Shown here in pieces: positions 3,355-53,642 of a stretch of 64,000 nt of DNA (position 1 is the first letter of the stretch; each line of letters opens with the position of its first letter). The notes beneath the pieces were generated by a model. The model was not told the origin of the DNA. It ran no database searches and worked only from the letters and a program-made list of their open reading frames with translations. The translations under genes were made by a program, and so were the position numbers. This DNA is from Vitrella brassicaformis CCMP3155 (taxonomy: Eukaryota > Protista > Chromerida), in contig CDMY01000464.1 of NCBI GenBank assembly GCA_001179505.1, positions 1 through 64,000 on the forward strand, read 5' to 3'.

Positions 3355-6300
3355 ATGGTCATCAGAGAGCCCAGGCGGCGGCATCGGCAGAGCGCACCAC
3401 AACACGGCTGGCTCCTGATCCTTGCAGCCCTCCCAGCCTTGATAGGTGAGCCAGCCACACGAAGCTGAGGCCCGAGCCATACCAGAGCATCTGTCCTTCT
3501 GTGCAGTGGTTGTATCCGCCCAGTCTTGGCGAGCTCCGGTTGGCGACCCCGAGCCCCTGTCAGAGGATACACTGGACCGCAGTGATGACGAGTTCCTCGC
3601 TCCCAACGCCACTAAGCAGTCACTGCTGCGAGATGTCAGCCCATGGAGGCAGAATGGTACGCCGCACACGCCCTCTCCTTGTTCTGGGCGCACCATATGG
3701 GGATGGTCTCTGTGTGCAGGTCCCTGGTCAGACGCAGAAGACGCCTCCACAACCGATGCTGAGGACACCGAAGAGGTCACGCCCCACGTGTCGTGCGAGG
3801 AGCTGGGCGGCCTCCTCGACCCCGTCACCAACACGTGCTGCCCCGAGTCATGCGGCCAGTGCGGCGGGCCCTTCTGTCACCTCCTCCCGTCAGGCCCATT
3901 CCACTGCTGTCCCCTACAGGTCGAGACACTCGGGCTCAAATGCGACGAGACCAACGAGCCGCCGTGTATCCTCGCGCCGCCCCGTGAGAAGGGTGCGCTG
4001 ATCGGTTCTGAGAGCTACCAGGAGTCGGTGTGTGCGTATGTGGGTGGGGTGTGGGAGGGGGAGGGGAGCGACGTGTGCTGTGGCAAGGGGTGCGGTTTGT
4101 GTGGCGGGTTTGGGTGCGACGGGCGGCCGGGAGGAAAGGACGAGTGCTGCGGCAGGGCGGTACTGGAGAAGAATGAGGGCTGTCTGGACAAAGGGGAAGC
4201 GCCGTGTGTCACAGGTATAAACGCACAATGGTCCACCTTGGGATGCTATGTCGATCTCTCGTACGTCTATTTGTTCGAACGTGTTCAGAGCCGTTCATCC
4301 CTCCCCCTCCATCCGAGGGCGTCTACATCAATGCAGGCGGCCCCTCCGTCGCCCACGACGGCATCGTCTACCAGCAGGACACCTATGCCGACGGCGGCAC
4401 GCAGGTCACTTTGGAGACCCTCTCGAGCAACCCCCTCCTCCTCACCACCCACACCTTCGACACATCCGATCTGTCCACCAGCAGCGGCTACACCATCCCC
4501 GCGGCCGCACTCTTCCCCTCGGAGCACCACAAGGGCGATGTCTGCCTGCAAATCGTCTTATCCGAGCTCACATTTAGCACCAAAGGGTCTCGTCTCTTCG
4601 ACATTTTGGTCAATGGGAAGGTCTGGGCGCGGCGAGTGGATGTGTATGAGCTGGGAGGGGGGCGGCAGAAGCCGATTGTGTTGCAGAGGTGCGTCGCGGT
4701 CGGCAAGGAGGGGCTGCGCGTGGGGTTTGCGGCCGTGCGGGAGGAGGCGAGCGTGGTGGGGCTGCGGGCGTTCGCAGTGAAGAACCCCACAACACAAGGG
4801 GAGATCTTCTGCCCCACACTGCTGACCAAGCTACCCCCACCAAGTGAGCAGATCAGCCAAACAAAGACGCATATGCCTGCGCACAATTTGCGTCTCTCAG
4901 GTTGCTATGAAGCCAACACCAGGCTGCTGGGGCCGTCTGTATCCAACACGACCCTGAAGGCGCGCACTGTGCGTGAGTGCCAGAAGCACTGTGGTGAGAC
5001 GGCAGAGTGCATCGCCTTTACCTATGAGGAAGCCAGCCTCACGTGTGTCCTCAAGACCGACCTTGAAAGCCGCGAGACCGCCGCACACATCCTCTCTGGG
5101 CCCAAGTCGTGCGAGAAAGGTAGGATGGCCACCAGCCACAACGGAGACAGAGGCAATGTGCCGGTGTCGATCAGAATGTTTTGAGGAGGGTGTGGATTAC
5201 TACGGGAATGATCTGGAGGCCTATCAGGATGTGGTGGGGCCTGTGGAGTGTCAGTACCAGTGTCAGGACCACCCCGAGTGCCGATTCTTCACATATCAAC
5301 CACACAACAACTGGTGACCTACACTACACAACAGACACTCCCCCGCTACCCTGTTCACTCTCCGTGTCCATCCATTCAGGTGCTTCCTGAAACGTGGCGG
5401 CTCCGGCCGCACCCGTGAGACCGATTCCATTTCGTCCAAGTCCATTTCCGGCCCGAAATACTGCCTGGAGTCGCCCCAAGACTTCTGCCACCGCATAGGC
5501 GGCACCTACGCCGGCCCACACAGCCCAGTCGCATCACCACACCAATGGGACATCAAGACCCACGCGGACATGCCAAGACGAGACGGTGGCATCGAGGGGC
5601 GCCTCAAGGCCGGGCGGCACGTGAGCGGCGCGTGCTGCCCGGCCGACTGCGGCGAGTGTGGGGGAGAGACGTGTGCAAAGGGGAGGAGTGAGTGCTGCGC
5701 AGCTGCCGGGCGAATGGCGGAGGACTGCGCCGTCAAGGGCAAGCCCCCGTGCTATGCCGGTGTGGCGCGGGGGCCCTCTCCTCCGTCCCAGTGCGCCTCA
5801 CCCTACGCCCTTACACACACGTGGCAGGGCGACTCAATGCTGTCGGCTTTCCACTTTGCGTCCTCATCAACACCAGCGACAGCGACAGCGACAGCAACAT
5901 CATCTGAAGGGCCGGCGAGGTTTGTTGGCCGACAGGAGGCGGTGGACGGCGGGATGGTGGAGGTGACCAAGGATGGAGACGTCATTGTGCGGGTGGACAC
6001 GGCAGAGGGAGAGGGAGAGGTCGGCAAAGATGAGGGGCGGAAGACCGTCAGCCTGAGGTCGCTGGACGCATTTGATGCGGTCGGTGAGGGGGCGCCAAGA
6101 AAGGCATGGTTCTTGTCTCATGTGCTGAGGAGGGTTGATTTTGATTGGATGGATGTGTGCAGGGGCTGTTTGTCTTCCATATTGCGCACGTGCCTTTCGG
6201 CTGTGGCGTATGGCCGTCGCTTTCCCTCCAGGGGCCTCACATGGACAAGGACGCACAGATCAACCTCATCGAAGGCACGACCACCACCCACCGCCACGAT

Positions 6301-7982
6301 ACCTGCTATTGCGCAATATGTGGTGTGGTGTGGTGTGCAGGCATCCACAATGGCGCTCGGAACCACTTCAGCGTCAGTGTGGGCGCGTCGTCCCCCTGTG
6401 TGCAGGCGGGGGCGGACCAGTCGCTCACCAGTGGGCACTGGGAGGCATCCAGACTCCTGCTCGACAACATACGTATGCACGCCACGCCCAGCCACACACA
6501 CCACACCACACCCATGTGCATCAATCATCCCGTGCTTATGATATCGTCAGGTCAACCATCGCGGCACTGTTCCTCCATCGATGAGCTGCAGTACCCCAGC
6601 CAGGCGTGCACCCTCCTCCCAGAAGAGCCCTTCCTCGGCCCCTCCCAGCCCTCAGAAGGCGGCTACTTCGTCGTGGAGCTAGACTCAGACCGACACATCA
6701 AGTACTGGTTCTTCCGCTCGTCCGAGGCGCCCCAAGACCTGCTCAACGACCACCCCACACCGACACCAGACGCATGGAAGCGCCCGCACGGCCTGGTGTC
6801 CCTGCAGACGGACACGTGCCCGGGATGGGACAACTTCAGGCAGATGCAGGTGGTGCTCAGGACGGGGCTGTGTGGGGATAGGAGAGGGGGGAATGCGGCG
6901 TTCGAGTGGGCCTGTCCTGGGCTGGGGAGGTGCGAGGACCACGTGCGCAAGAACGGCACGGCGCTGCGAGACGCGTATTGGGACATTCGTTCGGCGCGGG
7001 TGTTCCAGAAGGCGCCTACAGACCCATTCGATCCCGTCTGCTCAGGTGAGAACACTTGCGACCACACAGAGAAAGAATGGGACCTGTTTCATTTCACCTA
7101 CTTTCTTTGAAATCAGTGTGTGTGGAGTATGAGCGAGATGTGGAGTACCCATCCAACGAGCTGCGGACGATCGAGTCGATTGAGCCGCCCACTCCAGAGG
7201 GGTGCTGGCAGCACTGCCAGAGGGACGCCGAGTGCGCGGGGTTCGTGTTCGATGGAGGCAAGGGCGAGGAGGGGAAGGTTTCCTGTGTGCTCAAGCACGG
7301 CCTGGAGAGCCGCAAAGTCAGCAAAGGCAAAGTCGCGGGCATCAACAAATGCACCAAACAAGCACCAAGTAAGCTCCCTTCCCTTCCAATGGATCTTCCC
7401 TCACACATGGATGGATGGATGGATGGCTGCAGAGTGTGTGGTGTTTGAGGCCGACTACGCCTACACCTCCCAGTCGGCTCTCTCCCCCTCCCCCCTGGCC
7501 GACCGGCGCGACGTGACGTCCCCCTACTCCTGCTGGCAGCTCTGCGACACACACGCCGGCTGCAGCGCATTCACATTCCATGGGCAAGACAGACGGTGTG
7601 TGCTGATGCGGGAGCCGCTCTCACGGCAATATGAACCGAACAAAGGCAAGGTCTCGGGGTTCAAGCAGTGCGAGCACGACAGAGGTAAGCTGCCAACAGA
7701 GAGACACACCCGTCCACCATAGCACATGTATGCCTCTCTCTCTCAGTGTTGGATTGTTTTGCGTTCGAGCGGCATTACGAGGTGCTGGGAGCACCTATGG
7801 CGTCCATCCTCGCCCCCTCCCCCACACAGTGTGCGGCTGCCTGTGCGGCCCGGGGCAGGTGTCGGGCTGTGAGCTACGAGTGGGACACACAGCGGTGTGA
7901 GCTCCAGGCCGAGGGCCACCACCGTGTGTATCGTGGGCAGAGGAGGGCCGTCATGGCCGCGATCAAGACATGCGACAAATAA
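3355..7982 (+). CDS. Large secreted modular protein: signal peptide, 2 Cys-rich CCxxxCGxCGG repeats, malectin, 2 PAN/apple, 1 Cys-rich repeat, catalytically degenerate GH16 (Lam16A-type), 3 PAN/apple
   Basis: Signal peptide GWLLILAALPALIVVVSAQ. Malectin VYINAGG...RLFDILVNG...ASVVGL (~4320-4775). PAN motifs such as ECQKHC..C.AFTY...C.LK. GH16 GRKTVSL...GLFVFHIAHVPFGCGVWP...QINLIEGIHN...GGYFVVE...IKYWFF...TGLCGD...AYWDIRS. Stop TAA at 7980-7982. An alternative upstream in-frame ATG lies at 3124. Confidence 0.85.
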
Positions 7983-9666
7983 GGAGGGGGAGGGAGAGAG
8001 TTTGCGCGATGTGCATATTAATTACTGGATTGGTGCCGAGGCATGTGCGTGTGGCGTGGCGTGACAGTTCTGCGCTTCGCTGTGGATGCACGTGAGTGTC
8101 TCGTTTGTCTGCACTTTTTGGCTTGGGTGGATTTTGCGCTAGTTGTGATTTCTGTCGCGCAGACAGCAATGTAGGTAGGTAGGTAGGACACCACACGCGT
8201 ACACACCCATACATACGAGTAGAAGTGAGTGGGGTTGCTGGCTGGGCGTGGCGACGTTGTACATGGCGAGTGTGTGGCACTGTGTGCACGTCTGTATGGT
8301 GCGGATGTGTGACCAAAGCAGTAATTCTTCCGATGGCACCAATCGATTGGTTGGTCATTTACATGAGCTGTCTATGATCAGCGGTTCATGCGCAAGGCAA
8401 ACGTAATCGGTGTCTCTTCCAACCACCCAACCATGGCATCCATCCACCCAACAGCCACCAACACCAAGCCCGTGCTACCTCTCCACCCATGCACATCCGT
8501 GTGCTCGTGTAATGTGATGTGATTGATGTGTTGGATCGTCCCTCACCCCACCCCTCCCAACCCCCCCTCTCTCTCTGTCTCGCTCTCTTGTCTCTGTGCA
8601 GCCCAGAACGTTGTCATGCTGGTTGGTCGTTGGGGCATACATGAGTGAGAGAGGACATAGAGAGGGAGAGAGGACGGCAAGGGGGAGGGGCAGAGAGGCG
8701 GGCGAAAGTGGTAGCTAGACAAAACTGCTGTGTGTGCTGTGGGTGTTGTGTGTGTTGGTGGGATTGGTGGCTTACAACGAGGCGTGCCGTTTTGGCTACC
8801 GAACGAGCAAACAAGCATGCGAGCGAGCGAATCCATCCATCCATCCAGCAAAAATATCAGCGATGGTGTATGGGTGGAATGGGTGGGTGGGGTGTGGCGG
8901 GATAGGAAAGCAGCAAAGGCTGATCAGCATAGCTTAGATAGATAGATGTATAGATGTACATATTTAGGTATACGTATGTCTTTACGTATGCAAGACAATA
9001 GGATAGGATAGGACGGGGCATAGGATAGGTAGGGATCAATCATGACATGCACGACCTACCTGCACGTCCACACCACCGACAAATGCAATCAATGCAGACA
9101 TCACTGCACGAAGCGGCCAGGCCATCATATCATCAGCAACCCAAATCAGTCGAATCAATCCACACGCAAGACGTTGACTGACAAGGCGGACAGCCAGGCG
9201 AAGAGAGTGGCGTTGGTTGGGTGGTGGGTGGGTCATCTCACTCACTTAACGAACAGGCGGGCACAGGAGAGCCACGTCACGTATGCAGACGGACGGATCG
9301 GTGTGTGTGTTGGTTTGCACACATCCCTCTCTCTCTCTCTCTCTCTTCGGCCCTTTGTGTCATTTCTCTGCGTATGTGTGGGCGTGTGCCGATTGTGTTG
9401 TGTTGGGGTGTGTTGGGTGTCTGCAAGAGGTGGATAGGCGTCTCTGTGTGATCTGACTGACTTGTCCTATGAGCTATGAGCTATGGCTATCACCACACGC
9501 ACGTCACGTACGCAAGCAGGCCATAAATATGAAATCACACCAGACCACAATCCACGACATCCATCCATTCATCCATCCATCCATGTGTGAATGCAACGCC
9601 ATGCAATCAATGGAGGTACGTCACCAAGCCAGTAGTATGTGTATGTGTATGTGTATGTGTGGTTAC

Positions 9667-19981: not shown

Positions 19982-22900
19982 TAAACACACACACACATAC
20001 ACAGACACAGAGGGCTGGTGCTATTGAATGGATCTCTCTCTGTGTGGGCGTGAGTGAGTCACCTAACCTACCTGGTGCCACTGTGGTTCCAGTACTTCTA
20101 CGGTGAAGTAGTAGACGTAGTTGCGGCAGAAGTGCAGCATTCGCTGCCGGGTGAAGTACGAGTTGAGCAGCGCGTTGTGCAGGTTCAGCTCCTTCGTGTG
20201 CTGGTGATCCTGAACGAACAAGAAGCCAAGCCACACACACCACACCACACCACACCAACCTGGCCATCGACGGTGCGTCGAGTGCATCATCAGATGAACC
20301 ATACCTGCCAGACGTCGCACAATTTTCTCTCGACGAATTTGCAGAAGAGCAGGTGCCGAAATATTAGCTCGTACTTGAGCATCGACACTCGAGTAAACAA
20401 CTGCAGCCAACCACCCATAACATGCAACCACATCCACCATCCCCTCCCTCTCCTGCCTCTACCTACCTACGCACCCACCAGGTTGAGTGGCCATTCCGCC
20501 GTGTATCTGATGGAGAATGCGTGGAAGCCGTACGATGGCGCCTGCTGCTTGGGGTCGGGAATGGCTGTGCTCGACGTGGCCGGCACTGTGTCTGAGAACA
20601 GGAAGGCCGGCAGAGGCTTGGGGGCTGCTGCTGGTGGGACTGGTGCTGGTGCTGGAGGGGGTGCGACGGGAGGGTCCGCCACTGATGGCTGCAGGGCGGT
20701 GGGGTGCTTGCCCTTGTCTGAAGAGGCCAGGTAGTTGCAGGCATTCTGGCGGACAGAGGGAGAGAGACGAACATGCATAGGCAGACACGGGTAGGGTGCC
20801 CGTGGGCTGGGCGTGGTGTGGTGCGTTTGAGTACATACCAGGTACATGTATGGTCGGAGGGTGCAGGTGATGCTGTCACGGTAGGGGTCTGATGGAACGA
20901 ACGGAGAGAGAACCGGAGAGGCGTGGCATCCAAACACGACACGTGCACACGTGTGCACATGACATGATGTGTGTGTATGCTTGTACCGACCTTACCGTTG
21001 GCAGTGGATGAGGTGCGTATGGCGAGGTCCAGCAGGGACTCCAGCTTGCTCAGCGCCACACACGACACGCTCTTCTCCAACTCCTGCACATGATTATAAA
21101 CACGACCAAGTGACGCGCAGCGCCACACATGTCAGTCAAGGTGTCAAGGAATCGATGAATGACGTAAGTACATCATTGGCCGCCTCCAGGAACTGGTAGA
21201 AGAAATCGGCCCTGCAAACCAAACCACACAACACACACGCACCGCACACACCACACATCACATGCAGGCAAACGGCTGAGTGCATCCTATCCATGTCGTG
21301 TTTGTGTGTCTTACTTGTCGAGTAGGAAGAAGTGCTTGACAGACAGTAGGCGGCCCTTGAGGTCCAGCTGCCGCCAACAAAACTCTACCAGACTCATCGA
21401 AGCCCACTCGTACGCAGCCTCTACCAACTCAGTGTACGTTCTGCATTGCATTCATTGCAATCAACACACAGCACAGCACAACCAACACTCATGGACGTAC
21501 GTATACGGACTGACGGCATGATGGCGCGTCTTTTTTTCGCCAGCCAGCTCTTACTTACGCGAATTGGTTTGTGTACTTGATCTTGGGGGTCTCTCTCGAC
21601 TTGAGTGCGGCCGCCTCGCTGCCCCCCTGGCACGACAGCAGCACGTTCAGATACTTGCCCGTCTCCAAAATCTGCACACACACATCGTGAGGCATTCACT
21701 CCACAGTGTTGGACGGACGGATGTTGGCCGCCACCTGCTGTGCTGCCGGCTGAGCTGACCTTTTTCTTGGTCTCCTCCAGGAAGACGGGAACTCTTGTGT
21801 CGTCTAGGACGAATTTGCGTTCCCAGTAGCGGTCGCCGGTGCCGCCCTCAGTGTCGATTGGCATGAGGGAGGGATCGGACATGATAAAGAACTCATCGTA
21901 CGGGTCGTCCAGACAACCCTGGTGGATGGCATCACGCACACGGGTTGGATGTGTGGTGTGGTGAGGCGTGGTGGGGTGGGGCGGCTGTACTATACGTGGT
22001 ATAGCCATTTGGTGAGCATGTCGAACAGCGGCTCTGACGCCCTCGTCAGCAGAAACTCACCCAACTTGCGCGAATTCGGGGCACTGACATACACACATGC
22101 AATGCACAATCCAGACAGACAGACAGACAGAAACGGTGTGGTGTGTGTATGTTGTGTGTCTGCCTGGATTGTGCATTGCATGTGTGTATGCGATGCGTGT
22201 GGTGTGACCTGCTGGTCTCGAATGTGACGCTACGTATGCCGCTAAGCAAATCGCCACCCTTGCGCCTAAGCACAACAAACAAGACAAGAGATGGATAAGT
22301 GCGTGTGTGTATACTCACTGGTGTGTCGGACAACACCCCCCCACCCCCCGACCTGTAGTTTCGTTTGGCGACGCAGTGTAGCATCTGCATGGTCTCGCGT
22401 GCTGGCTGCATGAGGAACCACAGCTTGGATATCCGAAGCGTGCCGCGACGCAACTCCGTCTCCAACTGGGACACAAACACCTGCACCATTGGACGGACAT
22501 GGTGGACGGGACGTCCACGCGTCCACACACATACGAACAAATGCACCCGTGAGTGTGTGGAATGTGCTGCACTGCACCAAAGGCCCGACCTGGTACTCCC
22601 CCAGGAGCGTCTGCATGGCTGCGCAGAGGGCCTGTGACACCAACCTGACCAACAGAGGACGGGAAGCGACACAAAAGTAAATAAATACTCACAGGAGAGG
22701 GCGGGGTGGTGTCGGTCGCTGCCTCCTGGGTGTTGTGGTGCTGTTGCTGCCCACCCGTAGTCATGCCGCCAGTGGGTTTCCACGAAGGCACACACAGAGC
22801 GGTGGAAGGTGCAGAGGTTCGTCACATTCTCCACCATCTGCAGCTCGCCTCGCCACACATGCGACGCGACACACATGATATGATTCCCATTTCTCTCTGT

Positions 22901-23084
22901 CCGTACGTCAATGAGTGCATCCATTCATCACATGCATCACATCCCATACCCGGACGAGCGACGGGTCGGCAGCAGGGTCACCCTTGAGGTTGGTGTCGAT
23001 TCTGAAGTCGTAGATGGGCAGGTCGTAGGGAGCTGACACATCCAGATGTCCAGAATGTGTGCAGGTCAGGTGTGTGAGCACCCC

Positions 23085-28940: not shown

Positions 28941-31900
28941 ATGGCGTACTACGAAGTCTGCTCCACTGACGCTCACTGCAAGCGCACATTGCAGACACGA
29001 CTGGATGCCATCGAGGAGGTCCGCGGGGTGCTGGAGAGTGAAGGCATCGAGGTGCCCGGTGTTGTCGTATGCGGTAGGGAGGCTGCAAGGTGGAAGATGG
29101 GAGGATAACAACAGGTCACGGCTCGGTGTTGTGTGCGTCTGTGTGTCACTTCTTACTCACGGCAGGTGATCAGTCTGCGGGCAAGTCGTCGGTGTTGGAG
29201 CGCATCATGGGGGTGCCCTTCCCGCGAGCACAGGGGTGACCACTGCAGTGCACTGCACTGCACAGATGGGTGGCCTGTGCACTTGCTGGCCTTCTTCTAT
29301 CTGTGTGACCGCACAGGACCTGCACCAAGACGCCGACGATTCTGATGGGCGAGACCGACGCATCTGCCGACGGGGTCAGCGTGTGGGTGTCACTCAAGGA
29401 GGACATCACCGACGCTGAGGAGTTGAACGACATCAAGGACATCGGGAACAAGATCACCGAGCTGACGGACGACCTCGTCCGGCAAGAGGGCAGCGCCATC
29501 GTCAACCGGCCCATCTACGTAACCCAGTGCAGCGGGCAGCAGCTCTGTTGGTCTTGTCTTCGTCCATCTCTGCTGTGCGGTGTGTGTGCGTAGGTGCGGA
29601 TCCGTGGCAAGAATGTGCCGACTCTCACCGTCACCGATCTTCCTGGCCTGCTGTACAACAAGAAGGGCGACGAAAACATCCACGCCGAGGTCGTGGCGAT
29701 GGTCAACGAGTACATCGAGAAGGAGAAGACAGTCATCCTCTGTGTCGTGCCGGCGGGCGGCGACTTCCTGTCCACATCAGAGGTGCGTCGGGCAGGCACA
29801 CGTGCACCCATAAGGGTAGCTGCACACTTTGTGTTGTCTTCAGGCCATCAAGTTGGCCAAGGACGTTGACCCGGAGCGCCATAGGACCATTGTGGTCGTC
29901 ACCAAAACCGACAAGATCGAGCCCGGCGAGGAGGGTCGTCATTTCCTCAAGTCCATCAAGCAAGGCCAGGACGAGATCGGCGGCAAGAAGCTCAAGTGCA
30001 TCGCCCTCCGCAACAGAAAGCCAGATGAGGTACGGCAGACGATACACGGTGTCATGCATGGACAATTGTGTGCGCAGATCGTCCTGGACATTGACGCTGA
30101 GCAAGAGGAGGCGGCCTTCTTCGAGCGGCATCCGGACCTGTGCAAGCTGCTCAGTGAAGAGTGGGGCATCACGACGCTCGTCAAGCGCATCACCGACATA
30201 CAGGTCGTCTACGTGGACGAGTTCATGAAGGACATCAAGGGGAAACTCACCGAGAGTAAGTTAAGCACACCAGGGCGGATGATGAGGGGACCACAGCGGC
30301 TCCTGTGTCGGGTGTGTGTGTATCGTCAATCAGAGATTGAGTCGGTGACTGCTAAGCTGGCCACGCTGCGGCCTCCGTGTGTTGACATCAAGGACAAGAA
30401 CCGCTGCATGAACGACATCCTCATCGAGCTCGACCAGCTCCTCAAGCAGGTCAGACACCTGACTCCCACACGTCCGCACCACCGGACTCATCAGATCTGC
30501 CTTGTGATGTTTGTTGTCCAGCGAGGTTCTATCCGGCTGAGTGATGGAGATGACCGCGACTCGATTCAGTATGGCCTTCGTGAGCGTCTTGAGGACTACG
30601 CAAAAAGAATGAAGAATATCGACATCAACTTCTTCACAGAAGACATTTACAAACAGGTACGTACAAACAGAGGCACATCCCATATAGACACAGCCACGGA
30701 CACGTTGCGGCCAGGTGCTTGACCGTCTGGAGCGTTGTTGTGGGTTCGATGCGCCGCCCGAGCTGCCGCATCCAGATGTGTTCCAGGAGATGTATGTGGA
30801 CGCTTTCGAGCGCAAGCTGCAGGTCGAACACTACTCGCGCATCCTCGCGGAACACGCCTGCGGATTCATCAAGGTGGGCCAGCAGCATCCACACTCGGGA
30901 GGGAGATAATGGCAACCAGTAAGTATGCGCTTTCGTGTCAGTCTGAGTTGGACATTCTTGTCGAAAGCGTTGCTGATGCGTTCCCTTCATTCGTCGATGC
31001 ACTCCAGGTGAACGCAGCGTGCCTTCTTATGGGCATGGAGAAGTGCGTGTCTGTCTGTCTGTCTGTGTGTGTGTGTGTGTGTGTGCAGGGCAAGATAGCG
31101 TCGCTGCTAGACAGCAAGAAGCAGGAGGTGCTGTCCGCCATCGGATCGCTCATCCGCAGCCAGGGGGCCGTCTTTACTGCCAACCAAGTCTACAGCGAGG
31201 TAGGATCTTCTAAGGCTGCGCAGACGAGCCCCTCTTTGCCTGATGGGTCGCCCTTGCCCGCTGCAGATGGTCCAGAAGGGCCTGGCTGGTGTGCTGTCGG
31301 ACAACCACTTCTGGACCAACACCAGGATCGGGCGGAAGATGTCGATGAAGGTCTACAAGCAATCCAACCAGCCCATCCTCTTCAATCAGCTGAATGAGTG
31401 GTGGAACATGGGCCGCAAGTACCAGAGTGCCGTGACAATTCAGGTGTCGCTACACTTCTACGTGACCACGATGCTCGACCGTGTGGCCGACGACGTGGCC
31501 CTCATGGTGAGTGATGCTTTATTCTTTGTTGGCGTGTGTGGATTTGTGATGCTTTGATGGCTTGTATTGTGCTGGTTGGTCGCAGGTGCATCGGTTCCTG
31601 TATGCCGATCTGCGTGACACCTTCCTCACCGACATGCTCGTCGCATTCAGGTGTGACTAGATACATACCAGAGTGTGGCTCACTTGAGTGTCTCTGTCCA
31701 TATGTTTGGTGCTCATCTGTTCTGTCCAGGGACGACAGTTTGGTTGACGAGTGCATGGAGATGGAGCACTCGAAGCGACAGGCATACGAACTGACGAGCT
31801 GGTCAGCAGCAGCGGCCGTCAAGAGGATCTGCCACACACGGCGTGGAGGATGTACTGTGTGTGTGTATTGCAGGAAGAAGGACGAGCTGATCAAGGCCAT

Positions 31901-51284: not shown

Positions 51285-53642
51285 CTATCGCATGTCCAAT
51301 GTATTATCCATCTCTGGTCCATCCCCATCGCCCGCCCCTTCGCCGCCCTGCCCCTCTTGCTGCTGAGACGCTTCCTGCTCAGGCTGCCCTGCCTCCTGCT
51401 GCTGCTGGTGGTGCTGTTCGTCCTTCTTGCCCCTTCCCTTGGCCGACCTGCTCCTGCTCCCCGCTGAGGAGGTCCGCCTCTTGCTGCTGGCTGCTTTCCT
51501 CTGCAGGATGCGCTTGGTGGAGATGGTCTGCTGCCGCTCCATGGCCACGCCACGGGGCACCTCCGACAGCAGCCGGTCGCGCATCCGCTGAGACTTGAGC
51601 TTCAGGTGGTTGCGGATCTGGGTGAGCGTCTTCTTGTCGAACCAGCCTGATGGGTGGCACATAGATACATCCACACACACATCCACGCCACGCACATACA
51701 TGGACCATCCATGAGCAGAGGGGCGGGGCGGGGGGGCCTTGCCTGTGTCGATTTTTGGCTGTTGGAGGAGCTGTGCCTCCTTGAGGACCTTCTGGAGGGG
51801 GGCGTCGTCGATGTCGCCGAGTATGTACATCTGGTTCATCATCTTGGGCGGCACCTGGAACCGCATCAGCTGCTCGAACGTCGGCTCCTTCTCCTCAGCA
51901 CCCTCCTGCTGCCCCTCCTGGCCCTCCTGACCACCAGCCACCGCGGCTGCTGCAGCAGCAGCTGCTGATGGTTTGCCCTTGGTCTTCTCTTGTTGTGGGT
52001 TGTAGGCCGTGCTCCTGAAGTAGGGGTCGCGGAAATCGATCACCTGGACACAGGGAGGTGCATTCAGATGTCCGTGTGGTGTGGTGAATTTATGGGTGCA
52101 GTGACTGCACCTGGAAGAATCGCCCCTCTGGGTCTTGTCTTGGGTCATAGCCCCACCGACACAGCGCAAGCCGCCACGGACCATCTGCACACACACCCAC
52201 AGCACACACCACATCACACCAAGCAAAATTGCACGCGCCCGCACGTGCATGCATTTCGCCCATCCATCGGTTTGTCGCGTTGTCAGGCGCACCTTGCCAC
52301 GAGTAAGAGTGGTACGCGATGACGCGTCGCAGGGACCAGTCGCTGACACCTGTGAGGGGCTCCTTCTCCCTCAGCCGCGCCCTCGCGAAGTAATCCACCT
52401 GGGGACGCAGCCAGATGGGCTTCTCCTCAAACAGCCGCGCCACAATCTCACTCACCGCCGCACCTGAACGAACACCACAACCGATTATTGATGCTCGCCA
52501 GCTTCGTGTACTGTGTTGCGCTGTCATTCACCTGGTTTGAAGTCGATGTCAGATGGCCGTGCAGGTATGCCTTGGTCACTGAACTTGGCCAGGAACACCA
52601 GCTGCACCTGAGCCTTCTTGTCCTTGGCCGCCGACGGTGCCGGCACCACCGCCGTGCTCGTGTCTGCAACCTCCCTGCCCTCTCCTCCGGCCGGCGTCGC
52701 AGCAGCAGCTGTTGCTGCTGCTGCTGGTGGTGACGCCTCTCCCTCCTCCTGCTCGATGGCCGGCGTGGCCTCAGCCCACTTGCGGGCGAAAGTCCGCCTG
52801 GCGCCCCTCCCCGACGGCTTTTTCTTGGCCTCCGGATTCATCTCCTCTGGCTCCTCCTTGACCATTTCCATCGCCCCCTCACCTTCGTCACCAGCAGCAG
52901 CAGCAGCCGCAGCCGCGGCAGGAGCAGCCTCGCCCTCGGCCTTCGCAGCAGCCGCTTTGGCCTTTGCCTTTGCCTTTGCGGCAGCGGGTGGTGGCTCCTC
53001 GGGCAGCTGGAAGTCGAAAGAGTCATAGAGCTTGGAGAAGTAGGGAGGTCGGAAGAAGGCCATCTCGTCTTCAGGGATCCGGATGTCGTCCAGATCGAGG
53101 ACCGGCCTGCTCCGGGCGGTCTCAGGGGGCGTGAAGTAGAAGTCAGCCAAAGCACGGAAGCGATACGCGCGGGTCACGTAGCCCACTGGCTGGAAATTGA
53201 CGATCTCCTGCCGGCCATCAGCGTACTTGCGCCTCCTCACGCGCACCAGAAGGTCACTCGTGTCGCAGTGCCGAGATGGAACGGGCGTCGCGAAGCGGTC
53301 ATTCTCGCCCAGCCGGATGCTGAGAGGTCTGTCTGGGTCGTCGTCCCTCACGGCGGCAGAGATTTCGTCCTCGCCTCCCATGGCCTTGATGACTGCCTGC
53401 GGGTCCTGGACAGTGCCGGGCACCTCGATGCGGATAAATTCCGGCAGGGGAGGGCCGGGAGGGGGCCGAGTAGGGGCGACAGGGGAGGGAGATGCAGCCG
53501 CTGCAGCTGCTGCAGCCGCCGCTGGTGCTGCTGGTCCTGGCTCGGGTGCTTGCGGCATGTGAGTGTCGCCATTGATGGCTTGTCCGGTGTGGTGTGCCGA
53601 AGGGGCTGCAGGTGCCACATCTTCCATGAGTGAATCATCCAT
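51285..53642 (-). CDS. GTF3C5: RNA polymerase III transcription factor IIIC subunit tau95 (Tfc1/GTF3C5)
   Basis: IEVPGTVQDPQAVIKAMGG...VGYVTRAYRFRALADF; LFEEKPIWLR...GPWRLALCRWGYDPRQDPEGRFFQVIDFR. Confidence 0.85.

What the first reader, a model, noticed from the sequence alone, without database searches (positions are those of the whole stretch)
5770..7000. GH16 domain with a knocked-out catalytic motif inside a multi-lectin secreted protein: candidate non-catalytic beta-glucan sensor or adhesin
Seen: the spliced exons give a full Lam16A-type GH16 fold, but the ExDxxE motif reads Q-I-N-L-I-E (CAG 6256, AAC 6262, GAA 6271), and the conserved WPAFW reads WPSLS. Known: the first Glu is the nucleophile and the Asp assists it; GH16 domains that lose these residues act as glucan-binding receptors (insect GNBP/betaGRP). 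PAN/apple modules are adhesive domains of apicomplexan microneme proteins such as MIC4. Inferred: malectin + 5 PAN + dead GH16 + 3 Cys repeats is a carbohydrate-recognition or wall-scaffold protein in a free-living relative of apicomplexans, an architecture I do not recognise as described.
Basis: partly seen in the sequence, partly recalled or inferred. Interest (0 to 1): 0.8.

Follow-up and report, generated by a model that had tools for sequence, protein, structure and literature searches.

The report
Dead glucanase domain in algal lectin protein
A nuclear gene of the alga Vitrella brassicaformis encodes a secreted 1275-residue protein made of sugar-binding and adhesion modules around a well-folded beta-glucanase domain that has lost its catalytic residues. 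It is a duplicated enzyme turned non-enzyme, a known kind of event, and the gene is already in public databases without a functional name.

Summary
Window 3355-7982 (+) is one 13-exon gene of Vitrella brassicaformis. It is already deposited as CEM15032.1 / A0A0G4FN79 (1275 aa, "Apple domain-containing protein").

Its layout is: signal peptide, two 8-Cys modules, malectin, two PAN, a third 8-Cys module, a GH16_1 (Lam16A-type) domain, three PAN.

The GH16 domain aligns end to end with Lam16A (2CL2, E 1.2e-23). Its model superposes at TM 0.81/0.91. The catalytic strand reads Q-I-N-L-I-E, whereas 138 of 143 relatives have E-x-D-x-x-E.

Five more groove positions are changed: the second Trp of WPAxW, the WPx loop, His133 and Trp257. 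All eight conserved cysteines are kept.

The sister gene in the same genome (CEL96886.1) has the same PAN/8-Cys/GH16/PAN core, shares four intron positions, and has an intact motif. A coccidian glucanase (Besnoitia) also carries PAN.

I conclude that this is a duplicated PAN-flanked glucanase that lost catalysis. The "beta-glucan sensor" reading is only partly supported, because the canonical sugar groove is eroded too. Binding more likely rests on the malectin, PAN and Cys modules.

The scan had already noted other glucanase-PAN genes, one of them a pseudo-enzyme, elsewhere in this genome. Interest is moderate to low.

The parts
3355..3445 (+). Exon 1: start codon and the first part of the signal peptide
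   Evidence: P0156 residues 1-30 map here. GTGAGC donor.
3507..3656 (+). Exon 2: end of the hydrophobic signal core (LLILAALPALIVVVSA) and an acidic linker
   Evidence: P0156 residues 31-81. I missed this exon in my own model.
3720..4214 (+). Exon 3: two 8-Cys modules (3782-3973 and 4025-4213) with no Pfam family
   Evidence: Aligned with the third copy and with the P0002 copy; 17 invariant columns. No Pfam hit.
4289..4843 (+). Exon 4: malectin domain (about 4324-4791)
   Evidence: PF11721, E 1.2e-12 and 1.6e-11, profile positions 4-159 of 163.
4901..5119 (+). Exon 5: PAN/Apple domain 1
   Evidence: PAN_1 E 1.4e-7. In the same stop-free frame as malectin.
5175..5313 (+). Exon 6: first half of PAN/Apple domain 2
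   Evidence: PAN_1 E 1.5e-6.
5380..6079 (+). Exon 7: end of PAN 2, third 8-Cys module (5477-5762), and the N-terminal strands of GH16 (from about 5789)
   Evidence: Collinear with P0002 residues 195-387, E 8e-18. Family model positions 13-94.
6163..6274 (+). Exon 8: catalytic strand of GH16. WPSLS at 6211-6225, M-D in place of the WPx loop at 6241-6246, Q-I-N-L-I-E at 6256-6273
6275..6340 (+). GC-AG intron, 66 nt, in frame and free of stops
   Evidence: Same position and phase as a GT-AG intron of the paralogue. Spliced out in the deposited protein. Low pLDDT when translated.
6341..6472 (+). Exon 9: the strand next to the catalytic strand. The conserved L-H-T reads V-S-V (Ser833 at 6376-6378)
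6551..7045 (+). Exon 10: C-terminal half of GH16. Arg975 at 6880-6882 stands where Lam16A has Trp257
   Evidence: Family model positions 165-315, 119.7 bits..
7117..7368 (+). Exon 11: PAN/Apple domain 3
   Evidence: PAN_4 E 2.4e-8. The splice is confirmed by the P0001 fragment.
7433..7684 (+). Exon 12: PAN/Apple domain 4
7747..7982 (+). Exon 13: PAN/Apple domain 5 and the TAA stop (7980-7982). No C-terminal hydrophobic segment

Best explanation
Window 3355-7982 (+) is an intact gene for a secreted modular protein. Transcript support is direct for its last four exons. The GH16_1 (Lam16A-type) domain keeps its beta-jelly-roll fold but cannot hydrolyse glucan by the family's double-displacement mechanism.

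The gene arose by duplication of a PAN-flanked, active beta-1,3(4)-glucanase gene. The surviving active sister is CEL96886.1, and coccidian apicomplexans have the same kind of PAN-linked enzyme.

After duplication this copy changed the nucleophile Glu to Gln and the helper Asp to Asn. It also changed several residues that line the sugar groove. It kept every fold-determining cysteine.

Inferred, not shown: the protein works outside the cell, in the wall or matrix, as a multivalent carbohydrate-binding or scaffolding protein. Binding is carried mainly by the malectin, PAN and 8-Cys modules. The dead GH16 shell serves as a structural spacer or has acquired a different ligand.
For: Gene and organism:
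- The deposited protein P0156 (CEM15032.1, V. brassicaformis) is encoded at exactly these coordinates on CDMY01000464.1.
- The frame is open through 13 exons. GC3 is 0.63-0.82 in the 12 exons checked, against 0.42-0.61 GC in the introns.
- The P0001 fragment matches the last four exons joined without their introns.
- Deposited models used RNA-seq intron evidence (PMC4501334).

Fold:
- 2CL2 matches at E 1.2e-23, end to end.
- The model has pLDDT 88.9 and TM 0.81/0.91 to 2CL2. The nine best structures are all GH16_1.

Loss of catalysis:
- Q-x-N-x-x-E here, against E-x-D-x-x-E in 138 of 143 relatives.
- There is no second copy of the catalytic exon in the window.

Pattern of change:
- Of 55 family columns conserved at 80% or more, this domain keeps 37, including all 8 Cys, and loses 18.
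- Ten of the 18 losses fall in the 15 conserved columns around the catalytic strand (Fisher p 0.003). The paralogue keeps 48.

Origin:
- It is sister to P0002 (support 0.88), with a branch 1.9 times longer.
- Four intron positions and phases are shared.
- P0002 is collinear from PAN 1 to the end.
- Besnoitia P0079 and P0011 also join this GH16 type to PAN.
Against: - No binding, activity or localisation data exist.
- No close orthologue exists, so purifying selection on the dead domain cannot be measured. The next relative is 41% identical.
- The signal peptide is judged by eye and hydropathy only.
- The acid/base Glu is retained, which random decay would not favour.
Confidence: 0.62

Rival explanations
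1. The dead GH16 domain itself still binds beta-1,3 or beta-1,3/1,4-glucan in its groove and acts as the sensing or adhesive lectin of the protein.
For: - The fold and groove-forming strands are kept with high model confidence.
- The first Trp of WPAxW and the acid/base Glu are kept.
- A nucleophile-disabled Lam16A mutant still holds laminariheptaose (title of 2WLQ).
- Non-catalytic GH16 binding proteins are known in GH16_4 (PMC6827312).
Against: - Trp at family column 110 (98% conserved) is Ser.
- The W-P of the WPx loop (94% and 93% conserved) is M-D.
- His (98% conserved) is Ser or Gly, depending on the aligner.
- Asn191 (95% conserved) is Gln.
- The Trp257 position, which shapes the positive subsites, is Arg (PMC6827312).
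Confidence: 0.2
2. The GH16 part is a decaying relic with no function of its own, or the whole gene is a young expressed pseudogene.
For: - The branch is 1.9 times longer than the paralogue's.
- 18 of 55 conserved positions are lost.
- There is no orthologue to show constraint.
Against: - There are no stops or frameshifts in 3828 nt, and all 12 introns keep usable splice sites.
- All 8 conserved Cys and the core Trp and Gly residues are kept, and losses cluster at the active site rather than at random.
- GC3 of the GH16 exons equals that of the other exons.
- The model is confident.
Confidence: 0.1
3. The domain is still an enzyme, for example using another carboxylate as nucleophile or acting on another substrate.
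For: - The acid/base Glu820 is retained.
- New acidic residues lie in the loop before the motif (M-D-K-D).
- GH16_1 includes hyaluronidases and a transglucosylase (PMC6827312).
Against: - Both the nucleophile and the assisting Asp are amides.
- Family-wide, 98% keep both.
- E-to-S or E-to-A changes at the nucleophile are the standard inactive mutants in this subfamily (2WLQ and 3WDY titles).
Confidence: 0.04
4. The exons belong to more than one gene, or the catalytic exon is mis-spliced in the model.
For: One intron has a GC donor.
Against: - My own model and the deposited one use the same splice sites.
- Malectin and PAN 1 share one stop-free frame.
- The paralogue is collinear and has introns at the same four positions, and itself uses a GCACGC donor elsewhere.
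- The translated introns fold with pLDDT below 50.
Confidence: 0.04

Closest known systems
Lam16A of Phanerochaete chrysosporium (PDB 2CL2/2WLQ) and PtLic16A (3WDT), subfamily GH16_1
   Same: Same fold and sequence family. E 1.2e-23 over residues 6-298, TM 0.81/0.91. Same E-x-D-x-x-E spacing with the beta-bulge, conserved cysteines and C-terminal helices.
   Different: Nucleophile Glu115, Asp117, Trp103, Trp110-Pro111, His133 and Trp257 are all replaced. The domain is embedded in a 1275-residue multidomain protein. The organism is an alveolate, whereas CAZy GH16_1 is almost exclusively fungal (PMC6827312).
Vitrella paralogue CEL96886.1 / A0A0G4EK41 (P0002, 990 aa)
   Same: Sister in the tree. 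Same core order (PAN, PAN, 8-Cys module, GH16_1, three PAN), four shared intron positions, and a signal peptide.
   Different: P0002 keeps G-E-I-D-V-I-E-G, His and the Trp257 equivalent. It lacks the N-terminal pair of 8-Cys modules and the malectin domain.
Besnoitia besnoiti '1,3(4)-beta-glucanase' XP_029218066.1 (P0079) and unnamed P0011/P0151
   Same: Same clade of GH16_1 (support 0.95) and fused to PAN domains. The PAN-glucanase fusion is therefore shared by chromerids and coccidia.
   Different: Catalytic motif intact. Fewer modules. No malectin found.
Non-catalytic GH16_4 homologues of animals (betaGRP/GNBP type)
   Same: GH16 fold retained with catalytic residues mutated, in secreted recognition proteins.
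   Different: Different subfamily (GH16_4, derived from GH16_3) and different partner domains. Glucan binding there is cited for an N-terminal domain. The loss arose independently.
PAN/Apple wall and adhesion lectins (Toxoplasma MIC4; Phytophthora CBEL); from my own knowledge, not tested here
   Same: Secreted proteins that combine PAN/Apple modules with carbohydrate-binding modules.
   Different: None of them contains a GH16 domain or malectin.

Membership tests
Glycoside hydrolase family 16, subfamily GH16_1 (fold membership) | Beta-jelly-roll fold with sequence similarity to characterised GH16_1 members | tested here: met
   2CL2 E 1.2e-23 end to end. The top nine Foldseek hits are all GH16_1, TM 0.78-0.82 / 0.88-0.91. 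Precomputed PF26113 GH16_XgeA hit on the deposited protein.
Glycoside hydrolase family 16, subfamily GH16_1 (fold membership) | Helical elements added to the core, two N-terminal and four C-terminal (PMC6827312) | tested here: met
   The model has helices at 15-19 and 48-53, and at 240-243, 270-273, 293-299 and 306-317.
Glycoside hydrolase family 16, subfamily GH16_1 (fold membership) | Sequence pattern WPA ... WPX (PMC6827312) | tested here: not met
   WPS is present, but the WPX loop reads M-D-K. The active paralogue also lacks the second Trp (G-P-A).
Active retaining GH16 hydrolase | Nucleophile Glu, first residue of E-x-D-x-x-E | tested here: not met
   Gln815 (CAG 6256-6258). Glu in 127 of 130 relatives.
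Active retaining GH16 hydrolase | Assisting Asp | tested here: not met
   Asn817 (AAC 6262-6264). Asp in 127 of 130 relatives.
Active retaining GH16 hydrolase | General acid/base Glu | tested here: met
   Glu820 (GAA 6271-6273).
Active retaining GH16 hydrolase | Hydrolytic activity on beta-glucan | not testable with these tools
   Needs a recombinant enzyme assay.
Non-catalytic GH16 glucan-binding protein (betaGRP/GNBP-like function) | Catalytic residues lost while the fold is kept | tested here: met
Non-catalytic GH16 glucan-binding protein (betaGRP/GNBP-like function) | Demonstrated beta-1,3-glucan binding | not testable with these tools
   The sequence argues against an intact canonical groove.
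Non-catalytic GH16 glucan-binding protein (betaGRP/GNBP-like function) | Membership of subfamily GH16_4 | tested here: not met
   All significant sequence hits and the nine best structural hits are GH16_1.
PAN/Apple domain proteins | Pfam PAN_1/PAN_4 matches above the curated cut-off | tested here: met
   PAN_1 at 117.9 bits with 4 stretches; PAN_4 at 91 bits with 5 stretches.
Malectin / malectin-like domain | Pfam PF11721 match above the cut-off over the whole profile | tested here: met
   44.9-48.6 bits against a cut-off of 23, profile positions 4-159 of 163.

The most novel reading that the evidence does not exclude
The dead GH16_1 shell has been re-specified as a lectin for a different, possibly charged, wall or foreign polysaccharide. 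New Arg-Arg and Asp-Lys-Asp residues line the former groove. Together with malectin, five PAN and three 8-Cys modules, it would form a pattern-recognition or wall-assembly protein of the chromerid sporangium wall. That would be an alveolate parallel, evolved independently, to animal betaGRP/GNBP receptors. It would be linked to the beta-glucan wall scaffold known from coccidian oocysts.
Probability: 0.15. Interest if true: 0.55.

Novelty: new variant of a known kind. Interest (0 to 1): 0.33.

Why it matters
Glucanase-PAN fusions appear to be a shared toolkit of chromerids and coccidian parasites. Coccidian oocyst walls contain a beta-1,3-glucan scaffold (PMC3518913).

An active/dead paralogue pair with identical core architecture in one culturable alga is a clean natural experiment. 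It could show how a wall enzyme becomes a non-enzymatic wall or recognition protein, and what PAN modules and the unassigned 8-Cys module bind.

This does not open a new class of system. Loss of catalytic residues in GH16 is documented, at about 1% outside GH16_4 (PMC6827312). The protein is also already in public databases.

Tried and rejected
Tools that gave nothing usable:
No RNA reads could be found or laid.
- Pfam scans of single exons and of window:6163-7044 gave no GH16 hit. This means nothing: the same Pfam copy also fails on P0002 and P0005, so it lacks PF26113.
- Word searches with window:6163-7044, P0002 residues 296-650 and window:5375-6079 found only P0001 or the query itself. The full-length deposited protein was hidden because its 90% cluster is represented by the 305-aa fragment. 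It came out only through the listing of cluster members.
- The atlas search of the 8-Cys region gave a best score of 0.75, with no lead.
- Literature searches for Vitrella plus GH16 returned 0 papers. For Vitrella wall composition, nothing on the polymer was found.

Readings rejected:
- An alternative or duplicated catalytic exon in the window: none found.
- The 66-nt and 78-nt in-frame stretches as coding inserts. They lie at paralogue intron positions, are absent from the deposited protein, and have low pLDDT when translated.
- My own first exon model (12 exons, 1225 aa) missed exon 3507-3656. The deposited 13-exon model is better.

Exons were searched one by one by reference, or through the stop-free read-through window:6163-7044. 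The spliced protein was used only as the deposited entry P0156.
Full report
**What is there**

The window is nuclear DNA of Vitrella brassicaformis CCMP3155, contig CDMY01000464.1. The deposited protein CEM15032.1 / A0A0G4FN79 (P0156, 1275 aa) is named only "unnamed protein product" or "Apple domain-containing protein". It is encoded at record positions 3355-7982, which are the window's own coordinates.

I first built an exon model by eye. It had consistent phases, no internal stops, and GC3 of 0.63-0.82 in exons against 0.42-0.61 GC in introns. It agrees with the deposited model at every splice site. The one difference is an extra exon (3507-3656) that I had missed. That exon completes a convincing signal peptide, with a hydrophobic core LLILAALPALIVVVSA.

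I never joined exons myself. Exons were searched singly by reference, or through the stop-free read-through window:6163-7044. The spliced protein was used only as the deposited entry.

**Transcript evidence**

The UniRef entry A0A7S1NY54 (P0001, 305 aa) matches the last four exons exactly, joined without their introns, through to the TAA stop at 7980-7982. Its accession series suggests a transcriptome origin; that is my knowledge, not something tested here.

The deposited models were predicted with Augustus, using strand-specific RNA-seq as intron evidence (PMC4501334).

The intron after the catalytic motif (6275-6340) has a GC donor. Four things support it:
- It lies at the same position and phase as a GT-AG intron of the paralogue.
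- The paralogue's own deposited model uses a GCACGC donor elsewhere.
- It is removed in the deposited protein.
- When translated, it folds with pLDDT below 50.

**The GH16 domain**

- P0156:680-1025 aligns with Lam16A (2CL2) residues 6-298, E 1.2e-23.
- The four exons tile a family model built from 130 relatives, in order and without overlap.
- An AlphaFold model of residues 687-1022, built with 75 relatives, has pLDDT 88.9 and pTM 0.90.
- That model superposes on 2CL2 at TM 0.81/0.91, rmsd 2.2 A.
- The nine best PDB matches are all GH16_1 structures.
- The only disordered stretch is a Thr/Ala low-complexity insert.

The local Pfam copy lacks PF26113, so the blank scans are uninformative. The precomputed annotation of the deposited protein does list GH16_XgeA.

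**The active site**

Lam16A G-G-E115-V-D117-I-I-E120-G aligns with D-A-Q815-I-N817-L-I-E820-G. Among the best 150 of 1037 relatives, 143 cover the motif. Of those, 138 have E-x-D-x-x-E. The five deviants are scattered in the tree, each next to intact relatives, so such losses recur independently.

The erosion goes beyond the chemistry:

| Family position | Conservation in relatives | This domain |
|---|---|---|
| Second Trp of WPAxW | 98% | Ser |
| W-P of the WPx loop, bordering the negative subsites | 94% and 93% | M-D |
| Gly before the nucleophile | 98% | Ala |
| L-H-T on the neighbouring strand (His133) | His 98% | V-S-V |
| Asn191 | 95% | Gln |
| Lam16A Trp257 position, pointing into the positive subsites (PMC6827312) | W 55%; W/L/Y/F 92% | Arg975 |

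All eight conserved cysteines and the core Trp and Gly residues are kept. Of 55 columns conserved at 80% or more, this domain keeps 37 and the paralogue keeps 48. Ten of the 18 losses lie in the 15 conserved columns around the catalytic strand (Fisher p 0.003).

This is the pattern of a fold-preserving pseudo-enzyme, not of random decay. It also argues against an intact canonical glucan groove.

**Origin and relatives**

The closest relative is a paralogue in the same genome, CEL96886.1 (P0002, 990 aa, 41% identity).
- Its layout is signal peptide, two PAN, one 8-Cys module, GH16_1 with G-E-I-D-V-I-E-G, then three PAN.
- It is collinear with the window from PAN 1 to the end.
- It shares four intron positions and phases.

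On the C-terminal half of the domain the two are sisters (support 0.88). The window copy has the longer branch, 1.09 against 0.59.

The next clade (support 0.95) contains the Besnoitia besnoiti "1,3(4)-beta-glucanase" and unnamed proteins P0011/P0151. These also carry PAN domains and intact motifs.

So the PAN-glucanase fusion predates Vitrella and is shared with coccidia. The dead copy is a lineage-specific derivative. Compared with its sister it also carries two extra 8-Cys modules and a malectin domain at the N-terminus.

Earlier notes of this scan, unchecked by me, list many other glucanase-PAN genes in this genome. One is a bacterial-type GH16 that lost its acid/base.

**How it most likely works**

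Shown:
- An intact gene whose product has a probable signal peptide and no membrane anchor.
- Direct transcript support for the last four exons.
- A folded GH16_1 domain without nucleophile and helper Asp.

From established knowledge of retaining GH16 enzymes, this abolishes double-displacement hydrolysis. Nucleophile mutants of this very subfamily are the standard inactive forms (2WLQ and 3WDY titles).

Inferred: the protein acts extracellularly as a multivalent binding or scaffolding protein. Binding is carried mainly by the malectin, PAN and 8-Cys modules.

Context: coccidian oocyst walls contain a beta-1,3-glucan scaffold. A Toxoplasma GH17 hydrolase has a Cys-rich glucan-binding domain just before its catalytic domain (PMC3518913). 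The 8-Cys module lies directly before GH16 in both Vitrella paralogues and could play that role. This was not tested.

[quoted passage not shown] I found nothing on the polymer composition of its wall.

**Verdict**

This is a new variant of a known kind. Non-catalytic GH16 homologues are known, and about 1% of GH16 members outside GH16_4 have lost catalytic residues (PMC6827312). The protein is already in public databases, but I found no paper describing it or its dead motif.

Noticed in passing
window 3782-3973, 4025-4213, 5477-5762; P0002 residues 223-293: An 8-Cys module of about 60 residues with no Pfam family and no atlas lead. The pattern is C-x3-GG ... CC-x3-CG-x-CGG-x2-C ... CC ... C ... 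P-C. There are three copies here and one in the active paralogue, always directly before GH16 or malectin. It could be a glucan-binding module like the Cys-rich domain of Toxoplasma GH17.
   Followed up: partly
window 5510-5620: The third 8-Cys module carries a 35-residue insert absent from the other copies. The deposited model keeps it as coding. Whether it is an unrecognised in-frame intron is open without RNA reads.
   Followed up: no
window 6275-6340; L001 about 5451-5529: GC-AG introns with the same GCACG donor occur in both paralogues, at different positions. Both introns flanking exon 9 (66 and 78 nt) are in frame and stop-free. A retained-intron mRNA would therefore still encode a full-length protein.
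   Followed up: partly
P0045, P0014, P0096, P0049, P0126 (relatives from metagenomes, other assemblies and one named fungus, Nemania serpens): Five other GH16_1 relatives lack the nucleophile or Asp: V-I-N-I-I-E, K-L-D-I-V-E, R-I-N-I-I-E, D-I-V-F-M-Q and E-I-N-I-I-E. The four that are in the tree are scattered. P0045 and P0014 have a C-terminal hydrophobic segment, giving a receptor-like layout.
   Followed up: partly
P0079 (Besnoitia besnoiti XP_029218066.1): A coccidian protein named '1,3(4)-beta-glucanase' joins the same GH16_1 type (residues 240-569) to a C-terminal PAN domain (637-687). The mBio 2012 paper on oocyst-wall glucan lists only GH17 and GH81 hydrolases.
   Followed up: partly
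window 22049-22924 (-), 29829-30719 (+), 52527-53642 (-): The neighbouring open frames match a gamma-tubulin complex component N-terminal domain (below the curated cut-off), the dynamin central region and the TFIIIC Tau95 triple-barrel domain. These are ordinary nuclear housekeeping genes, with no clustering of wall genes.
   Followed up: no
window 8000-9600: The stretch downstream of the stop is lower in GC (0.52-0.54), with no long open frame and short TG/CA-type runs. It is probably 3' UTR and intergenic DNA.
   Followed up: no
protein collection (tool behaviour): The 1275-aa deposited protein is clustered at 90% identity under a 305-aa fragment as representative. Length-filtered searches and the representative library therefore showed only the fragment. 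Other 'unannotated' calls in this scan may have the same cause.
   Followed up: yes
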